64,000 nt of DNA, from NCBI GenBank assembly GCA_002269645.1, contig NIVC01002463.1:62001-126000 (forward strand), in the 5' to 3' direction. The translations under genes were made by a program, and so were the position numbers. Numbering within the stretch: the first letter of the stretch is position 1; each line of letters begins with the position of its first letter. Below, one piece after another: positions 12,991-22,494 of the stretch. The DNA is from Macrostomum lignano. Its lineage: Eukaryota. The notes beneath the pieces are model-generated. The model saw only the letters and a list, made by a program, of their open reading frames with translations, was not told the DNA's origin and did not search any database.

Positions 12991-14355
12991 CACTATTTTA
13001 CCCCCCTCACACTACTCTGTCCCTCTCCTATCCCTTTCTATTGTACTTTACCTTTCCTCAATTTTCACGAGAACAATCTTTCATTCAACTTTAGTTTTCA
13101 AACAGAAATGTTTATAACTTTTGACAGAATTTCATGCATTGTCCTCTGATTACGGCTTATACATACGATGTTTTAGCTCATTATCTAGCTGAATCTAGCG
13201 CTGTACTCATTTTTCATTATCTATAATTATTTGCCCTCTTGCATTGTGAGTTAGTCGCTATCGTTAATAATGTATTGGAGAAATTCAACATAGTTTTCTT
13301 GCTATTTACTGTATACTTGATGATTAGTTTGGACACGCCTCACTTATGCTCCGTGCTTTTTCTCTGCTTCTTCCACCCCTAGCCGGTTTCTGGTGAATGA
13401 CGACTTGACTGATTTGTACTTGCTGGAGCAGTGCTGCGGGCCCTCCCTTTCCAATGCTCTCTTCCCTCTCCATAGCTACAAGTCAGGGGGGGGGGCGAAT
13501 GCAAAGCACAATGGGCCGTAGCAATAGTCCTTGCTTGGTGTGTTTCTATTTTTAGCATCACGCACTATATTATTATTTTTATTTTTATTACCAATCATTA
13601 TATGCTTGTAAGCGTATGACTGCGTTTAATATTAACTGTGTACAAGCTGCATAAAATGTCACTGACTATATAAGGCGTCACCGAAGCAGAATATTTAAAT
13701 ATGTAATTGTATCGTATAGAAGAAGGAATGTAGCGATTGCAGTGCCAGGTGTATCGAATATCCGGCTCTGTTGTGTGCTCTGTGTGAGTGCAGGGTGCCG
13801 GACCCAGCGAGCTTTGCGAGTTTATAAACTCGATTTCCGGTCCGTTAGTGTGTGTTGCCGGATCAATTTCACTGAATCCAAATCCAATGCGGTTCCCTTG
13901 TAGTCTTAATCCAAGCTTTGGTCCTTGCTTGTTTTCTAAACCTTATATTATGAAGTGCTTCTCTTTCTATAGAAACTTCTCTTTTCCTGTGAGTTTTCTT
14001 ATACTCTTGAACGAAAAGATTTTCAACAATTGCGGTTTAGTTGAGCCTGCATTATATTATTACTCTCTGATTTTAGTACTTAAAAGTAGTGCGTAATGAA
14101 ATTTGGCTAGAATTTTTTTCCGAGGCCAACTCGCACGCATCCAAAGTAGCCGATGAATTATTGTTATAAAACCACAAAATTGCAGACACGGCGGCGGCTG
14201 GTGGTCAGTTCCGCAGCTGCTAATCCACGATTCCAGGTGCCAAATCTCCAGGCGTCATCGCCGGGCTAATCGCGTTCGCTGTATCGGTTGGCTTAGCAAC
14301 TCTCTTGACTGTTTGGCCGGCTGTTAGCCAGTGCTCAACTGGGGCTAATCATAGT

Positions 14356-16469
14356 ATGCTGAAGGGTGAGTCTGCTTTTGTCACCATGTGGCCGAGTGAA
14401 TGACAAGTTATGACTCATGTTATAGAGGTGGTATGACTTATTTCCAAAAACTTTTTTGCATAGTCATAGGACATAAAGTCATAGACAAGTAATGAGTCAT
14501 TAGCCCTGACCCAGACAGGTAATGAGTCATTAGCCCTGACCCAGACAGGTGATGAGTCATTAGCCCTGACCCAGACAGGTAATGAGTCATTAGCCCTGAC
14601 CCAGACAGGTGATGAGTCATTAGCCCTGACCCAGACAGGTGATGAGTCATTAGCCCTGACCCAGACAGGTGATGAGTCATTAGCCCTGACCCAGACAGGT
14701 GATGAGTCATTAGCCCTGACCCAGAAAGGTGATGAGTCATTAGCCCTAACCCAGATAAGTGATGAGTCATTAGCCCTGACCCAGACAGGTGATGAGTCAT
14801 TAGCCCTGACCCAGACAGGTGATGAGTCATTAGCCCTGACCCAGACAGGTGATGAGTCATTAGCCCTGACCCAGACAGGTGATGAGTCATTAGCCCTGAC
14901 CCAGAAAGGTGATGAGTCATTAGCCCTAACCCAGATAAGTGATGAGTCATTAGCCCTGACCCAGACAGGTGATGAGTCATTAGCCCTAGCCCAGATAAGT
15001 GATGAGTCATTAGCCCTGACCCAGACAGGTGATGAGTCATTAGCCCTGACCCAGACAGGTAATGAGTCATTAGCCCTGACCCAGACAGGTGATGAGTCAT
15101 TAGCCCTGACCCAGACAGGTGATGAGTCATTAGCCCTGACCCAGACAGGTGATGAGTCATTAGCCCTGACCCAGACAGGTGATGAGTCATTAGCCCTGAC
15201 CCAGAAAGGTGATGAGTCATTAGCCCTAACCCAGATAAGTGATGAGTCATTAGCCCTGACCCAGACAGGTGATGAGTCATTAGCCCTGACCCAGACAGGT
15301 GATGAGTCATTAGCCCTGACCCAGACAGGTGATGAGTCATTAGCCCTGACCCAGACAGGTGATGAGTCATTAGCCCTGACCCAGAAAGGTGATGAGTCAT
15401 TAGCCCTAACCCAGATAAGTGATGAGTCATTAGCCCTGACCCAGACAGGTGATGAGTCATTAGCCCTAGCCCAGATAAGTGATGAGTCATTAGCCCTGAC
15501 CCAGACAGGTGATGAGTCATTAGCCCTGACCCAGACAGGTGGTGAGTCATTAGCGCTGACCCAGACAGGTGATGAGTCATTAGCCCTGACCCAGAAAGGT
15601 GATGAGCCATTAGCGCTGACCCAGACAGGTGATGAGTCATTAGCCCTGACCCAGAAAGGTGATGAGTCATTAGCCCTAACCCAGATAAGTGATGAGTCAT
15701 TAGCCCTGACCCAGACAGGTGATGAGTCATTAGCCCTAGCCCAGATAAGTGATGAGTCATTAGCCCTGACCCAGACAGGTGATGAGTCATTAGCCCTGAC
15801 CCAGACAGGTGGTGAGTCATTAGCGCTGACCCAGACAGGTGATGAGTCATTAGCCCTGACCCAGAAAGGTGATGAGTCATTAGCCCTGACCCAGACAGGT
15901 GATGAGTCATTAGCCCTGACCCAGACAGGTGATGAGTCATTAGCAAATACTCAGACAGGTGATGAGTCATTAGCACATACTCAGACAGGTGATGAGTCAT
16001 TAGCAAACACTTAGACAGGTGATGAGTCATCAGCAAATACTCAGACAGGCAATGAGTCATTAGCCCTGACCCAGATAGGTGATGAGTCATTAGCCCATAC
16101 TCAGACAGGTGATGAGTCATCAGCAAATACTCAGACAGGTGGTGAGTAATCGCCACAGAATTGTGTCAAGTGCTAATGCTGTAGTCATTAACAGAACTTC
16201 TCTAAAAGCCACTCATCCAACCCTCGCTTATTCAGGCCATCGGTTCCGCAGCTCCTGGGCCAGGGCCGCCTACCACAAGATGCAGTTCGATACCGAGCAC
16301 CTGTCTGAGAACAGCCGCCATCTTGAATGGTATCGGTTAGAACAGCCGCAGCTGCTGCCGAAGGAATTGGCTGATGCTTTTGTACAGTTGGAACAAGTGC
16401 GTTTGTAATGTGTAGTAGAAGTAGTGTAGTGGCAGATTAGTAGTAGTAGCAGTAGTAGTACGAGTAATG

Positions 16470-16541
<72 letters not shown>

Positions 16542-18028
16542 ATAGTAGAAGTAGTAGTAGTAGTAGCAGTAGTAGTAATGGTGGTAGTAGTAGTAGTACT
16601 AGTAGTAGTAAGTGGTAGTAGTAGTAGTAGTAGTAACAATAGTGGTAGAAGTAGTAGTAGTAGTAGTGTAGTTTAATCAGAAATATAAAGCTTAACAAGG
16701 AGTGAGACCCAGGTCTCCATGTCAATAGTCAGTCCAGATAGTTCGCATTCGATCCGGTAGTTGCCTACCCTTATCAATCTATACCAGGACGCAGAGACGG
16801 AGGCCTTCCTAGAGAACAGCTACGCCAAGTCTGAGCGTCTGCTAACCCAGCTGTACCATCGCGTTGCCAAGCCCCTGCTCTGCATGTTCATGTCCGTCAC
16901 TAGCGCCAATGGCTTCTTGCGACGCGGCTCAATGTTTGTCCTGTTCGGGGAACAGTTCCGACGACTCATCGTTGGGAGCGACTCTGGAGATCACCAGCAG
17001 CAGCAGGAGCCGCTGTTCGATTCGCTGCTTGACTTGGGCGCCGGCGATGGCAACGTGACCAGCCACTATGCCGGCTACTTTAGGCGAGTGTTCGCCACCG
17101 AGATGGCTACGGTGAGGGACTATCTGTCTGCTATCCTAGTGTCTGAGGGGGTGTTTAGCTACCCGTATCATGTTCGGGGAGAGTGTGACTGTCATTCTGT
17201 GAGACGGTGTGTCTACCTGTACAATGTCCGCGGAGGGTGTAGCCTCTACCGTGATGTCCTGAGAGGGTTTAACTGCCACCACAATGTCTGCGGAGGGTTT
17301 AGCCCCTATCGTGATGTCCTGAGAGGGTTTAACTGCCACCACATGTCTGCGGAGGGTTTAGCCCCTATCGTGATGTCCTGAGAGGGTTTAACTGCCACCA
17401 CATGTCTGCGGAGGTTGTAGCCTCTATCGTGATGTCCTGAGAGGGTTTAACTGCCACCACAATGTCTGCGGAGGTTGTTGCCCCTATCGTGATGTCCTGA
17501 GAGGGTTTAACTGCCACCACAATGTCCACCAATGGCACATTCAGTGTTATATCGATCAAATCCATATCGCAGGTGATGACATGGCGCTTAGCCGAGCGCG
17601 GCTACACGGTAGTGGATCCAATCACCTGGTTGCCAACGCAACCGGCCATAGATGCCGAGCCGGAGCTGGACGCTCACTACGACTTGATCGGGTGCTTCAA
17701 CCTGCTGGACAGGTGCGAGGCCCCCCTGGACCTGCTGGCGCAGGCAAAGCGCCGTCTCCGGCCCGGCAGCGGCCGCCTCCTGCTAGCCGTCGTGGTGCCG
17801 TTGCGTCAGTTCTGCGAGTTCGCGCCCGGCAACCGGCCCGCGCAGGTTCTTGCGGTCAGCGGGCCGACATTCGAGGAGCAGTTGGCCAGCCTAGTCAGCA
17901 ATGTGCTCCGGCCGCAGGGCTGGGCAGTGGTGCGATGGGCCAAGGCGCCTTACCTGTGCGAAGGCGATCTGTATCAGAGTTTCTATCACCTGACTGATGC
18001 CGTGCTGCTGTTACGGCCTACGGATTGA
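14356..18028 (+). CDS. METTL9: Protein-histidine N1-methyltransferase METTL9 (DREV1); exons 14356-14365, 16236-16396, 16788-17111, 17573-18028; ~316 aa
   Basis: All junctions are GT-AG and phase-compatible. Motifs NGFLRRGSMFV, LLDLGAGDGNVT, FATEM, CFNLLDRC and PYLCEGDLY match recalled METTL9. The true start may lie further upstream. Confidence 0.9.
14480..16145. repeat. 30-bp minisatellite (gatgagtcattagccctgacccagacaggt), ~55 copies, in a METTL9 intron
   Basis: Period of 30 is visible line by line. Source of the spurious 572-aa ORF. Confidence 0.97.
16415..16675. repeat. (GTA)n microsatellite in a METTL9 intron
   Basis: Direct reading; gives the poly-V, poly-L and poly-T ORFs. Confidence 0.97.
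17221..17530. repeat. ~60-bp minisatellite, ~5 copies, in a METTL9 intron
   Basis: acaatgtctgcggagggtttagcccctatcgtgatgtcctgagagggtttaactgccacc is repeated. Confidence 0.92.
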
Positions 18029-18039
18029 CTGGGAGTGAT

Positions 18040-19088
18040 ATGTGAGATCATGGGATGAGATCTGAGATCATGGGATGAGATCTGAGATCATTGGATGAGA
18101 TCTGAGATCATTAGATGAGATCTGAGATCATTAGATGAGATCTGAGATCATTGGATGAGATCTGAGATCATTAGATGAGATCTGAGATCATTGGATGAGA
18201 TCTGAGATCATTAGATGAGATTTGAGATCATTGTATGAGATCTGAGATCATTAGATGAGATGGAGATCATTGGATGAGACCTAAGATCTTTATATGAGAT
18301 CTGAGATAATTGGATGAGATCTGAGATCATTAGATGAGATTTGAGATCATTGTATGAGATCTGAGATCTTTGGATGAGATCTGAGATCATTAGATGAGAT
18401 GGAGATCATTGGATGAGACCTAAGATCATTATATGAGATCTGAGATAATTGGATGAGATCTGAGATCATTAGATGAGATTTGAGATCATTGTATGAGATC
18501 TGAGATCATGGGATGAGATCTGAGATCATTGGATGAGATCTGAGATCATTAGATGAGATTTGAGATCATTGTATGAGATCTGAGATCATTAGATGAGATT
18601 TGAGATCATTGTATGAGATCTGAGATCATTAGATGAGATGGAGATCATTGGATGAGACCTAAGATCATTATATGAGATCTGAGATTATTGGATGAGATCT
18701 GAGATCATTAGATGAGATTTGAGATCATTGTATGAGATCTGAGATCATTGGATGAGATCTGAGATCATTATATGAGATCTGAGATCATTAGATGAGATCT
18801 GAGATCATTATATGAGATCTAAGATAATTGGATGAGATCTGAGATCATTAGATGAGATTTGAGATCATTGTATGAGATCTGAGATCATTGGATGAGATCT
18901 GAGATCATTATATGAGATCTGAGATCATTGGATGAGATCTGAGATCATTAGATGAGATTTGAGATCATTGGATGAGATCTGAGATCATTGGATGAGATCT
19001 GAGATCATTAGATGAGATCTAAGATAATGGGATGAGATCTGAGATCATTAGATGAGATTTGAGATCATTGTATGAGATCTGAGATCAT
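18040..19088. repeat. 20-bp minisatellite (gagatctgagatcattRgat), ~50 copies, starting just after the METTL9 stop
   Basis: Direct tandem repetition. Confidence 0.96.
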
Positions 19089-19689
19089 AGTTGCTTATTT
19101 AAATTGCATTACTGAATTATTGATTGCTACCCACTGCTCCACTGAGCTGCATGCTTTTATTGTTTCTGTTACTTCAATTGATGTCTCCTCTTTAATTTCC
19201 TCTGTTGCTTCTTTAAACAAGCCGGGAGTTGAGCTGATAAACAGCAAAGTTCCATGCCATACTGGTACGCGCGGGCTCATGATTGCAAAATCACATGGCT
19301 ATTGTAATCATTATTTGTCACCTACAGTCATTACTTTCATAGAATTTATTAAAATCTAGGCGCTGTTTTTTATAACGAATATTCTTTCTAGGTTTGTTAA
19401 ATTGTTTTATGCTTTTAAACCGTTTTGCACGCGTTATAAAATTCTGTGTTTTGTCACACTGGTTTCGGCTAAACTGTTCTGTGAATTTTTTTGCGCATGA
19501 GTGACTCAGTTAATAAACATTGTCAGAGTTTGTAAACCTTCATTGACTTATTTGTTGACTCGTCTGTGGTTATCATAAAGCTTTAGATAAGGATCCTATT
19601 AAAGTGGGTATGAATTATGAAACTTAAATTGCATGACAACACGGATTTTCCTTCTGATACTAATTTTTATATAACACGTCCTCAATCAC

Positions 19690-20635
19690 AGTATCATGCT
19701 CAACATCATGCTCAAATGGCACACAGCATCATGCTCAGCCTCAACTAGAACACGGCATCATGCTCAAATGGCACACAGCATCATGCTCAAATGAAATGGC
19801 ACACAGCATCATGCTCAAATGGCACACATTATCATGCTCAACTAGAACACGGCATCATGCTCAAATGGCACACAGCATCATGCTCAAATGGTACAGCATC
19901 ATCATGCTCAACTAGAACACGGCATCATGCTCAAATGGCAACACAGCATCATGCTCAAATGGCACACATTATCATGCTCAACTAGAACACGGCATCATGC
20001 TCAAATGACACAGCATCATGCTCAAATGGCACACATTATCATGCTCAACTAGAACACAGCATCATGCTCAAATGGCAACACAGCATCATGCTCAAATGAC
20101 ACACATTATCATGCTCAACTAGAACACAGCATCATGCTCAAATGGCACACAGCATCATGCTCAAATGGCAACACAGCATCATGCTCAAATGGCACAGCAT
20201 CATGCTCAAATGGCAACACAGCATCATGCTCAAATGGCACACATTATCATGCTCAACTAGAACACGGCATCATGCTCAAATGGCCCACAGCATCATGCTC
20301 CAATGGCACACAGCATCATGCTCAAATGGCACACAGCATCATGCTCAAATGGCACACATTATCATGCTCAACTAGAATACGGCATCATGCTCAAATGGCA
20401 CACAACATCATGCTCAAATGGCACACATTATCATGCTCAACTAGAACACGGCATCATTCTCAAATGGCACACAGCATCATGCTCAAATGGCACACATTAT
20501 CATGCTCAACTAGAACACGGCATCATGCTCAAATGGCACACAGCATCATGCTCAAATGGCACAGCATCATCATGCTCAAATGGCACACATTATCATGTTC
20601 AACTAGAACACGGCATCATGCTAAAATGGCATGAC
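19690..20635. repeat. 21-24-bp composite minisatellite (catcatgctcaaatggcacacag / catgctcaactagaacacgg)
   Basis: Direct tandem repetition, ending ~30 bp before the ALKBH2 acceptor. Confidence 0.95.
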
Positions 20636-20668
20636 TAGAACGTTACACTTTACACTTTACATTGACAG

Positions 20669-21279
20669 CAATCTATAACTTTGCTGTCTTCTACAAAGAA
20701 GCGTAAAGCGGATAGCGACACGGAGGATGACAAAGCAAAAGCGTCGCCTCCGCCTAGCAAAGCCATAGCAACCAGTTGCCATAGCAACGATCCAATGCCT
20801 GTGAGAGACGCCGAAGAGGCCGAGCTGGTCAGCGAGCTTCGGAATTTGGCCCAGTCGGTCAGCAGCAGCCGCAGCATCGAGCGGCGCCAGCTGCGGCTGA
20901 CCTACTATCCGGCCTACCTGCCCAGCAAGATGGCTGGCCGGCTGTTTCGCCTACTCGAACGCCAGGTGACCTATTATGGACCGGACATTGCCAAGGTGTT
21001 CGTGTTCGGCAAATGGCACCCAATGCCTAGGCAGCTGTGCGCTTATGGAGATGCCGGGGTTGCCAGGTGGGTATGATGGGGGACTTGATAGCTGAGGTCC
21101 TGATTTACTAACTTCCTGACGCTGTCAATGGTCAATTTTTGGGCATTGGTTATATGTATCGCCTACTGAAGAGTAGCGAGAGAAGAATGTGATAAGAGTT
21201 TCTAATACGAGTATATGAAAACTATGAAATTGCCAAGTGCAGTGCAAAATGGCACACAGCATCTGACTGACAAGTGAAT

Positions 21280-21355
<76 letters not shown>

Positions 21356-21356
21356 A

Positions 21357-21430
<74 letters not shown>

Positions 21431-22494
21431 GCTAACTAACTAACAGACTAACTAACTAACTAACTAACTCACTAACTAACTAACTAACTAACTAACTAAA
21501 TAACTATACTAACTCATTCATTCACTCATTCACCCTCTCATTCACTTACCTACTCAGTCACTCACTCACCCACTCACTCACCGACTCACCCACTCAATCA
21601 CCAACTCACTTACTCACCCACCCACTCACTTACACACTCACTCACTCACTCACTCACTCAACCACTCACTCACCAACTCACTCACTCACTCACTCAACCA
21701 CTCACTCACCAACTCACTCACTCACTCACCCACTCACTCACCAACTCACCCACTCACTCACCCACTCACTCACTCACTCACTCACTCACTCACCCACTCA
21801 CTCACTCACTCACTCACTCACCCACTCACTCACCGACTCACCCACTCAATCACCAACTCACTTACTCACCCACCCACTCACTTACACACTCACTCACTCA
21901 CTCACTCACTCAACCACTCACTCACCAACTCACTCACTCACTCACTCAACCACTCACTCACCAACTCACTCACTCACTCACCCACTCACTCACCAACTCT
22001 CCCACTCACTCACCCACTCACTCACTCACTCACTCACTTACCCACTCACTCACTCACTCACTCACTCACTCACTCACTCACTCACTCACCCACTCACCCC
22101 GCAGGCACCAGAGTACCGGCCAAGCCCTGGCTGCCCAGCCTCGCCGCCATTCGCGACGTCCTCGCCGCCGACGCCAAACTTGGCCACGTCCGCTTCAACT
22201 TCGCCCTGGTTAACCGGTATGCCACCGGTGATAATTACATCGGCGAGCACCGGGACAGCGAGCCGGACCTCGACCCTCTGCGCCATAGTCAGCCTGTCTC
22301 TGGGCGCCCAGCGGGATTTCTATTTCCGTCAGCCGCTGATGGGCGAGAAGGTGCAGCTGGCGCTGGCCGGCGGCAGCCTGCTGGCGATGCAACCGCCAAC
22401 CAACAGTCACTGGCTGCACTCCCTGCCCAAGCGGAAGCGGGTCCAGCAGCCTAGGATTAACATTACCTTCAGGCGGATTGTTACTAGCGGCTGA
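20669..22494 (+). CDS. ALKBH2: AlkB-family 2OG-Fe(II) DNA demethylase ALKBH2; exons ~20669-21067 and 22105-22494; no ATG, an unresolved junction and an apparent frameshift at ~22275
   Basis: KVFVFGKWHPMPRQLCAYGDAG; AKPW; FNFALVNRYATGDNYIGEHRD (HxD); then, in a shifted frame, IVSLSLGAQRDFYF, LAGGSLLAMQPPTNSHWLHSLP and RINITFRRI. Confidence 0.85.
21285..22100. repeat. (CTAA)n followed by (CACT)n microsatellites filling the ALKBH2 intron
   Basis: Direct reading; the switch between the two is at ~21510. Confidence 0.96.

What the first reader, a model, noticed from the sequence alone, without database searches (positions are those of the whole stretch)
20660..20800. ALKBH2 lacks an ATG but starts at a phase-0 acceptor: candidate for a spliced-leader-donated AUG
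Seen: attgacag|CAA TCT ATA ACT TTG...KKRK (AG at 20667-68) is in frame, and the first in-frame Met (~20795) would drop the KKRK NLS-like motif. I found no convincing upstream coding exon; a weak ATG GCT ATT|gtaatc at ~19295 is the alternative. Established: flatworm spliced leaders end in AUG, which can serve as the initiator. Inference: translation of full-length nuclear ALKBH2 would depend on trans-splicing.
Basis: partly seen in the sequence, partly recalled or inferred. Interest (0 to 1): 0.7.

Follow-up and report, generated by a model that had tools for sequence, protein, structure and literature searches.

The report
Broken flatworm ALKBH2 copy lacking ATG
This is the 5' end of a damaged extra copy of the Macrostomum lignano DNA-repair gene ALKBH2, whose intact sister copy probably takes its start codon from the trans-spliced leader, a mechanism known in flatworms since 2006, so the case is plausible but ordinary.

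Summary
The sequence observation holds. There is an AG at 20667-68 and an in-frame TGA at 20663-65. The frame is open from 20669, KKRK is at 20696-20707, and the first in-frame ATG is at 20795.

The organism is Macrostomum lignano. Its single 35-nt spliced leader ends in ATG.

Two further genomic copies change the picture:
- The only intact copy (L003) and a second copy (L002) carry a consensus trans-splice acceptor (TTTCAG / TTGCAG).
- The window copy has lost that AG (TTGCTG).
- The window copy also has an 11-nt deletion at the end of exon 1 and two 1-nt deletions in exon 2. As assembled it encodes only a truncated product with no dioxygenase domain.
- A basic N-terminal motif, T[KR]KRKS[DE], recurs at the N-termini of ALKBH2 orthologues. 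This supports coding upstream of the ATG.

An SL-donated AUG is therefore the best explanation for the gene family (about 0.5). The exact junction in the window is uncertain, and no RNA evidence was reachable. The mechanism is already established (Cheng et al. 2006).

The parts
19704..20631 (+). 23-nt tandem array (CATCATGCTCAAATGGCACACAG, about 40 copies, two ATGs per unit) just upstream of exon 1. Presumed outron material that must be removed from any mRNA initiated further upstream.
   Evidence: TRF. There are 71 ATGs in 19690-20640 and 141 in 18029-20668. The same array has 73 copies in L002 and 169 in L003.
20663..20665 (+). In-frame TGA that closes the reading frame immediately upstream of the first candidate acceptor.
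   Evidence: Conserved in all three copies.
20667..20668 (+). It differs from the published motif [T/C]TNCAG at one of the five specified positions.
   Evidence: Motif from PMC8629364. Present in all three copies.
20681..20686 (+). TTGCTG: remnant of the consensus trans-splice acceptor. It reads TTGCAG in L002 and TTTCAG in L003, with the junction before TCTTCT at 20687, phase 0. The AG is lost in the window through T at 20685.
   Evidence: Three-copy alignment. UniRef model P0001 (L003-type) begins SSTKKRK, exactly after this site.
20697..20698 (+). Candidate acceptor (b): AAG|AAG, phase 0. It is the first AG downstream of the pyrimidine tract ctttgctgtcttct once the consensus AG is lost. It is the junction implied by the public model's CDS start at 20702, if that model carries the same +3 offset seen in two neighbouring models.
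20700..20701 (+). Candidate acceptor (c): AAG|CGT, phase 0, directly before the annotated 5'-partial CDS start at 20702.
20669..20794 (+). Open reading frame without an ATG (QSITLLSSTKKRKADSDTEDDKAKASPPPSKAIATSCHSNDP). It contains KKRK at 20696-20707 and is the putative SL-AUG-dependent N-terminal tail.
   Evidence: Similarity to orthologue N-termini is above composition-matched shuffles and visible in alignment A1.
20795..20797 (+). First genomic in-frame ATG (MPVRDAEE...), conserved in all three copies. It is the rival start site and lies upstream of the whole catalytic core.
20669..21066 (+). Exon 1 as far as the GT donor at 21067. An 11-nt deletion (tacacctattc, codons YTYS) at 21063/21064, relative to L002 and L003, shifts the frame across the splice.
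   Evidence: The public model P0004 reads ...GVAR|HQSTGQ.
21067..22104 (+). Single intron (GTGGGT...CGCAG), filled with (CTAA)n and (CACT)n-type simple repeats.
22105..22494 (+). Exon 2, holding the codons for the 2OG/Fe(II) dioxygenase core. The ancestral stop is TGA 22492-94. Two 1-nt deletions lie in C runs (22274-76 CCC instead of CCCC; 22283-84 CC instead of CCC). The frame actually reached from exon 1 stops at TAA 22211-13.
19295..19303 (+). It is present in the window and L002. In the intact copy L003 the ATG is deleted and the donor is mutated.

Best explanation
The window holds one of three Macrostomum lignano copies of ALKBH2, the 2OG/Fe(II) DNA demethylase.

In this gene family the exon-1 reading frame stays open upstream of the first genomic ATG, up to a spliced-leader acceptor. 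The 35-nt SL ends in AUG. Joining it to the consensus acceptor (TTTCAG|TCT in the intact copy L003) puts that AUG in frame and gives M-SSTKKRKSDSD..., a short basic NLS-like tail ahead of the catalytic core.

The window copy is a decaying duplicate. The consensus AG is mutated (TTGCTG). The SL would therefore have to join at 20668|69, 20698|99 or 20701|02, all of which are in phase 0. In addition, an 11-nt and two 1-nt deletions break the frame. The best product of this locus is about 160-170 residues long and has no dioxygenase domain.

Shown: the anatomy, the three-copy comparison, the SL sequence, and the domain content.
Inferred: that the gene is trans-spliced, which junction is used, and that the SL AUG is the initiator.
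For: - Identity: exon 1 is 100% identical to BOX15_Mlig011029g1 on NIVC01002463.1.
- The SL ends in ATG, 30-39% of M. lignano genes are trans-spliced, and the acceptor motif is [T/C]TNCAG (PMC8629364; PMC5730564).
- L003 carries an intact 260-codon ORF with TTTCAG immediately before TCTTCT, and L002 has TTGCAG. Both are in phase 0.
- Independent gene model P0001 starts at SSTKKRK, and P0004 starts at RKADS just after AAGAAG.
- Two neighbouring 5'-partial models start 3 nt after perfect YTNCAG sites.
- No conserved upstream ATG exon exists.
- There are 141 ATGs in the 2.6 kb upstream, so that stretch cannot serve as a 5'UTR.
- The repeat-adjusted distance to the upstream same-strand gene is about 670 nt, below the published 1-kb operon criterion (my arithmetic, criterion).
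- Orthologue N-termini carry T[KR]KRKS[DE] near their Met. None of 2000 shuffles reached the summed score; per-target p was 0.007-0.08.
- The L003 protein matches human ALKBH2 structures at E = 4e-53 and Pfam 2OG-FeII_Oxy_2 at 6e-33. The window product P0004 hits no family.
- The SL AUG is established as an initiator in flatworms: Cheng et al. 2006, as cited in PMC9851317 and PMC12582326.
Against: - No SL-containing read, cDNA or peptide for this gene was available. The supplements searched do not list it.
- The open frame alone arises by chance in 7-12% of trials.
- The extension lacks the gene's codon bias (GC3 0.45 against 0.76).
- The few substitutions among copies within it are mostly non-synonymous: A/S and C/F, against one synonymous change.
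- ATG 20795 is conserved and is sufficient for a complete catalytic domain.
- The orthologue motif is short and of low complexity, and the orthologues used are related to one another.
- The window's lesions could in part be errors of a PacBio assembly polished in duplicated sequence, the homopolymer ones above all.
Confidence: 0.5

Rival explanations
1. Ordinary initiation at the genomic ATG 20795. On this reading, 20669-20794 is 5'UTR that is open by chance. The mRNA either starts at a promoter in the last about 160 nt before the ATG, or it is trans-spliced but the ribosome skips the SL AUG. The protein begins MPVRDAEE and lacks KKRK.
For: - ATG 20795 is conserved in all three copies.
- It lies upstream of the entire Pfam domain and structural core.
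- The open frame has a 7-12% chance expectation, and GC3 of the extension (0.45) is unlike the coding part (0.76).
- Only one out-of-frame ATG lies in 20634-20794.
Against: - If the mRNA is trans-spliced at any of the four candidate AGs, the SL AUG is the first AUG and is in frame with no stop. Scanning ribosomes would then translate the extension anyway.
- TKKRKSDS resembles the N-terminal motif of the orthologues.
- Two independent gene models are open-ended at AG junctions rather than starting at this ATG.
- Consensus YTNCAG acceptors are kept in phase 0 in the copies that retain them.
Confidence: 0.28
2. A cis-spliced upstream exon supplies the ATG. This could be the reader's ATGGCTATT|GTAATC at 19295, or another exon further upstream, joined to one of the phase-0 acceptors.
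For: - A phase-0 ATG...|GT string exists at 19295-19303 in the window and in L002.
- Flatworm acceptors are often shared between cis- and trans-splicing (PMC12582326).
Against: - In the intact copy L003 a 64-nt deletion removes that ATG, and the donor reads ATAATC.
- None of the 27 phase-0 ATG...GT candidates between the upstream gene's stop and the acceptor has the GT[G/A]AG donor motif.
- Only two of those candidates are conserved in L003, and both have poor donors.
- Neither public model includes an upstream exon.
Confidence: 0.07
3. Near-cognate (non-AUG) initiation within the extension, for example at TTG 20681 or CTG 20684, on an mRNA that is not trans-spliced.
For: TTG CTG lies in frame just before SSTKKRK in the window.
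Against: These codons vary among the copies (TTG CAG, TTT CAG). They coincide with the acceptor motif itself. Nothing points to a specialised context.
Confidence: 0.03

Closest known systems
SL-AUG-dependent mRNAs of Schistosoma mansoni (Cheng, Cohen, Ndegwa & Davis 2006, J Biol Chem 281:733), called 'slORFs' in the slORFfinder paper (PMC9851317)
   Same: A flatworm SL ending in AUG is joined at a phase-0 acceptor to an ORF that has no genomic AUG for its conserved N-terminus. The SL supplies the initiator methionine. [quoted passage not shown]
   Different: Here trans-splicing of the gene is inferred, not observed. A downstream genomic ATG could still yield an active enzyme. The held M. lignano papers do not discuss use of the SL AUG as an initiator.
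Human ALKBH2 (PDB 3BTX, 3RZG and others)
   Same: Same catalytic core: E = 4e-53 for the intact copy, with HxD...H and the C-terminal RxNxTFR conserved. Both proteins carry a short, probably disordered N-terminal tail, which the crystallised human constructs leave out.
   Different: From my own knowledge, the human tail starts with its own Met and an APIM PCNA-binding motif (MDRFLVK). Marine orthologues start MDKFVTRKRK. The M. lignano tail has the basic patch but no aromatic APIM-like residue and no genomic Met. The window copy is also frameshifted.
M. lignano SL trans-splicing and operons (Ustyantsev & Berezikov 2021, PMC8629364; Wudarski et al. 2017, PMC5730564)
   Same: The acceptor motif [T/C]TNCAG is present in the sister copies. 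Neighbouring genes lie on the same strand at repeat-adjusted distances under 1 kb. Repeat-rich intergenic DNA matches what was described for operons.
   Different: The trans-splicing status of this particular gene was not retrievable. The window copy's consensus acceptor is mutated.

Membership tests
SL-AUG-initiated ORF (flatworm type, Cheng et al. 2006) | The organism has a spliced leader whose last three bases are AUG. | tested here: met
   The organism was identified as M. lignano. The SL is CGGTCTCTTACTGCGAAGACTCAATTTATTGCATG (PMC8629364).
SL-AUG-initiated ORF (flatworm type, Cheng et al. 2006) | The mRNA is actually trans-spliced to the SL at a defined acceptor. | not testable with these tools
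   No RNA reads were reachable. Indirect evidence only: consensus YTNCAG in L002/L003, gene models that begin at AG junctions, and operon-like spacing.
SL-AUG-initiated ORF (flatworm type, Cheng et al. 2006) | The SL AUG is in frame with the main ORF, with no stop between them. | tested here: met
   The junctions at 20668|69, (20686|87 in the sister copies), 20698|99 and 20701|02 are all phase 0 in an open frame.
SL-AUG-initiated ORF (flatworm type, Cheng et al. 2006) | No genomic AUG is available for a conserved N-terminal segment. | tested here: inconclusive
   There is no in-frame ATG between TGA 20663 and ATG 20795, and no conserved upstream ATG exon. Conservation of the segment rests on a short basic motif shared with orthologues. 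Codon bias does not support it.
ALKBH2 (AlkB-type 2OG/Fe(II) DNA dioxygenase) | A complete 2OG-FeII_Oxy_2 domain with the HxD...H iron ligands in one reading frame. | tested here: not met
   The window copy's spliced frame ends at TAA 22211-13. Its product P0004 hits no Pfam family, and three deletions separate the pieces. The feature is met by the sister copy L003 (Pfam 5.9e-33; H180, D182 and H237 are invariant in alignment A1).
ALKBH2 (AlkB-type 2OG/Fe(II) DNA dioxygenase) | Closer to ALKBH2 than to other AlkB homologues. | tested here: met
   Human ALKBH2 chains score E = 4e-53, against ALKBH3 at 6e-17. Named hits are ALKBH2.
M. lignano operon (Ustyantsev & Berezikov criterion) | Same-strand neighbours with a repeat-adjusted intergenic distance under 1 kb, with the downstream gene trans-spliced. 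| tested here: inconclusive
   METTL9 stop at 18028 to the acceptor at 20669 is 2640 nt. Subtracting 1046 and 928 nt of tandem repeats leaves about 670 nt. Trans-splicing status is unknown. Gene names (Mlig004158.g2 against Mlig011029.g1) do not place the two in one transcriptional unit.

The most novel reading that the evidence does not exclude
In M. lignano the only functional ALKBH2 copy can obtain its nuclear-targeting N-terminus solely from the SL AUG. Trans-splicing would then decide whether the repair enzyme carries its basic tail: SL-initiated with KKRK, against ATG-38-initiated without it. Duplicated copies would decay partly by losing the SL acceptor. More broadly, trimming the SL before ORF calling would have mis-annotated many M. 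lignano N-termini as 'partial' or truncated, possibly including the neighbouring METTL9.
Probability: 0.35. Interest if true: 0.4.

Novelty: new member of a known kind. Interest (0 to 1): 0.25.

Why it matters
If confirmed, it adds a free-living model flatworm and a DNA-repair enzyme to the list of genes whose initiator methionine comes from the spliced leader.

It also points to a practical annotation problem. The public M. lignano models trim the SL before ORF calling. ALKBH2 therefore appears as a 5'-partial fragment (P0004), as a model truncated at an internal Met inside the catalytic domain (P0002), or not at all (the intact L003 copy).

It does not open a new mechanism. SL-AUG initiation in flatworms has been established since 2006. 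With 30-39% of genes trans-spliced, in-frame SL AUGs are expected in many genes.

Tried and rejected
- I searched the supplements of PMC8629364, PMC5730564, PMC5816591 and PMC5173321 for Mlig011029, Mlig011487 or ALKBH2. There were no hits; only ALKBH3 is listed.
- Wasik et al. 2015 (PMC4603488) is not held.
- I searched the window for the SL sequence with up to 3 mismatches and found none, so there is no SL RNA gene here.
- I first read 'Mlig011487.g8' as the eighth gene of a polycistronic unit. I rejected this. The prefix names a cd-hit cluster, and the METTL9 neighbours carry unrelated prefixes.
- P0006 starts MSSLTKEN..., which resembles (M)SSTKK. Its contig shows no SL-like sequence upstream and its organism is unknown, so I do not use it as evidence.
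- I considered alternative donors in the window that might restore the frame after the 11-nt deletion. None has GT in the required phase (reading).
- An early script included base 21067 in exon 1 and produced a spurious in-frame read-through. I corrected it: the donor GT is at 21067-68.
- Substitutions between copies are too few to test selection on the extension.

Full report
**What is in the window.**
- Around 20660-20800 the sequence reads ...cattgacAG|CAA TCT ATA ACT TTG CTG TCT TCT ACA AAG AAG CGT AAA GCG....
- The AG is at 20667-68, and an in-frame TGA lies at 20663-65.
- The frame is open from 20669. KKRK is at 20696-20707, and the first in-frame ATG is at 20795-97.
- The other two frames of 20669-20794 are closed.
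- The open frame alone is weak evidence. 12% of shuffles of the region, and 7% with the local non-coding composition, are equally open.

**Organism and gene.**
- A protein search identifies the gene as Macrostomum lignano ALKBH2. Exon 1 is 100% identical to BOX15_Mlig011029g1 (P0004, a 5'-partial model) on scaffold NIVC01002463.1.
- The gene has two exons (20669-21066 and 22105-22494). They are separated by an intron full of (CTAA)n and (CACT)n repeats.
- M. lignano has a single 35-nt SL, CGGTCTCTTACTGCGAAGACTCAATTTATTGCATG. 30-39% of its genes are trans-spliced, and the enriched trans-acceptor motif is [T/C]TNCAG (PMC8629364; PMC5730564).
- That flatworm SLs end in AUG, and that this AUG can be the initiator, is established. 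Cheng et al. 2006 is cited in PMC9851317 and PMC12582326. In Schistosoma mansoni the SL AUG is in frame in 28% of trans-spliced transcripts, and more than 40 cDNAs need it.

**Three genomic copies.**
- Besides the window (= L001), I recovered a near-identical copy, L002 (NIVC01000089.1, model P0002).
- Through the upstream METTL9/DREV gene I recovered a third, more diverged copy, L003 (NIVC01000019.1). The window and L003 differ by 16 substitutions in 770 exonic bases.
- All three share the same gene order: METTL9, ALKBH2, SNF2-type helicase.
- L003 has no ALKBH2 gene model, yet it holds the only intact copy. It has 783 exonic bases, giving 260 codons from TCT to TGA.
- The L003 protein matches human ALKBH2 structures at E = 4e-53 (ALKBH3 scores only 6e-17). 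It matches Pfam 2OG-FeII_Oxy_2 at 5.9e-33 over residues 72-255.

**The window copy is damaged.**
- Relative to both sisters it lacks 11 nt (tacacctattc, codons YTYS) at 21063/21064.
- It also lacks one C in each of two C runs (22274-76 and 22283-84).
- After splicing (donor GT at 21067, acceptor AG at 22103-04), the frame runs ...GVAR|HQSTGQ... to TAA 22211-13. This is exactly what the public model P0004 shows. The product hits no Pfam family.
- L002 is damaged differently. A 16-nt shorter, rearranged patch at the equivalent of about 20830-20856 puts the N-terminal part out of frame. Its model therefore starts at an internal Met (MAGRLF) inside the conserved domain, and that Met is a Leu in L003.
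- The homopolymer deletions could be errors of a PacBio assembly polished in duplicated sequence. The 11-nt and 16-nt changes, and the substitution at 20685, look more like real mutations. This was not testable here.

**The acceptor.**
- Eighteen nt downstream, L003 reads acTTTCAG|TCT TCT ACA AAG AAG and L002 reads cTTGCAG|TCT TCT. Both are perfect [T/C]TNCAG sites and both are in phase 0. The window reads TTGCTG, so its AG is lost.
- The older, independent gene model P0001 (L003-type, with KRKSDSD and VRNAEE) begins exactly at SSTKKRK.
The variable positions among the copies sit in the acceptor hexamer. Both fit a pyrimidine tract and acceptor rather than coding sequence.
- In the window, the first AG after the mutated site is AAG at 20696-98, which is again phase 0.
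- The public CDS starts at 20702. Two neighbouring 5'-partial models in the same annotation begin at the first in-frame codon 3 nt after perfect consensus acceptors. These are METTL9 on L003 (TTGCAG|, CDS at +3) and the helicase on L003 (CTCCAG|).
- By the same rule, the annotated junction in the window would be 20698|20699. A junction at 20701|20702 without an offset cannot be excluded.
- Whichever of these AGs is used, the SL AUG is in frame.

**Is the tail coding?**

For:
- ALKBH2 orthologues from marine metatranscriptomes begin MDKFVTRKRKSED..., and another carries ...VTKKRKDSQ. MAFFT aligns these with M. lignano SSTKKRKSDSD.
- Local alignment scores of the 36-residue tail against six orthologue N-termini exceed composition-matched shuffles. 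Per-target p was 0.007-0.08, and none of 2000 shuffles reached the summed score.
- The targets are related to one another and the motif is of low complexity, so I treat this as moderate support.

Against:
- GC3 of the tail is 0.45, against 0.76 downstream.
- Differences between copies in the tail are mostly non-synonymous.
- ATG 20795 is conserved and lies upstream of the whole catalytic core.

**Alternatives for the missing ATG.**
In the intact L003 a 64-nt deletion removes its ATG, and the donor reads AT.
- A scan of 18029-20668 found 27 phase-0 ATG...|GT strings. None has the GT[G/A]AG donor motif, and only two are conserved in L003, both with poor donors.
- The 2.6 kb upstream consists of a 20-nt array (18043-19088), 615 nt of unique DNA, and a 23-nt array (19704-20631) with two ATGs per unit. 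That makes 141 ATGs in all, so it cannot be a working 5'UTR.
- Either transcription starts within the last about 160 nt before ATG 20795, or the upstream RNA is discarded as an outron.
- The repeat-adjusted distance from the METTL9 stop to the acceptor is about 670 nt. This is below the 1-kb criterion used to call M. lignano operons.

**Verdict.**
- The most likely account (about 0.5) is that M. lignano ALKBH2 is SL trans-spliced at a phase-0 acceptor, and that the SL AUG initiates a short basic N-terminal tail.
- The window holds a decaying duplicate. It has lost the consensus acceptor and its reading frame.
- The main rival (about 0.28) is ordinary initiation at ATG 20795.
The mechanism is plausible and the organism qualifies. 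However, the junction is probably not the one named, the locus cannot make a full-length enzyme as assembled, and the SL AUG is not needed for catalytic competence.
- Because SL-AUG initiation is textbook for flatworms, this is a new member of a known kind and of modest interest. Its practical value lies in flagging systematic N-terminal mis-annotation.

**Dead ends.** Supplements of four M. lignano papers did not list the gene. The original genome paper is not held. The SL sequence is absent from the window. Gene-name suffixes do not indicate operon position.

Noticed in passing
window 14184-14358 (acceptor AG 14184-85, GGG run 14263-65, TAA 14267-69, ATG 14356); L003 9992-10175: The upstream METTL9/DREV gene shows the same pattern. 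A perfect TTGCAG acceptor in phase 0 is followed in L003 by a 56-codon open frame with no ATG (P0058, 5'-partial, with the hydrophobic stretch GLIAFAVSVGLATLLTVWPAV) running up to the annotated Met (MLKG). In the window and L002, one G fewer in a G run puts a TAA in that frame. Invertebrate orthologues mostly start at the MLKG-equivalent Met, whereas lamprey has a signal peptide. Whether the extension is real remains open.
   Followed up: partly
L003 17792-19380: An intact ALKBH2 copy (260 codons, one intron) lies between METTL9 and the SNF2 helicase on NIVC01000019.1. No gene is called there in GCA_002269645.1. The two annotated copies (window and L002) are both frame-broken.
   Followed up: yes
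L003 9997|9998 and 20107|20108; window 20698|20699: 5'-partial CDS models of the public annotation begin at the first in-frame codon 3 nt after consensus YTNCAG acceptors. This suggests a systematic 3-nt offset of trans-splice-defined 5' ends. It also suggests that 'partial' often means an ORF open to the SL junction.
   Followed up: partly
window 19704-20631; L002 8036-9730; L003 13895-17748: The 23-nt tandem array CATCATGCTCAAATGGCACACAG directly upstream of ALKBH2 varies from 40 to 73 to 169 copies among the three loci. A relic of the unit (aaatggcacacagcat) also sits in the intron at about 21249-21265.
   Followed up: partly
window 18043-19088: A second tandem array (20-nt unit TGAGATCATTGGATGAGATC, about 52 copies) starts 15 nt after the METTL9 stop codon. 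It has about 24 copies in L002 and L003.
   Followed up: no
L006-L008 (Tara Oceans metatranscriptome contigs): The closest marine ALKBH2 orthologues (N-terminus MDKFV[TI]RKRKS, an APIM-like motif plus a basic patch) sit on transcript-sized contigs. A Pcc1-family ORF lies about 60 nt upstream on the same strand, so the transcripts are apparently bicistronic. The source organism is unknown.
   Followed up: no
window 23458 onward; L003 20108-20200: The downstream SNF2/helicase gene starts with ATG (MDAVKS) in the window and L002. In L003 it is modelled as 5'-partial and open to a CTCCAG acceptor. There the SL AUG would be out of frame with the annotated CDS.
   Followed up: no
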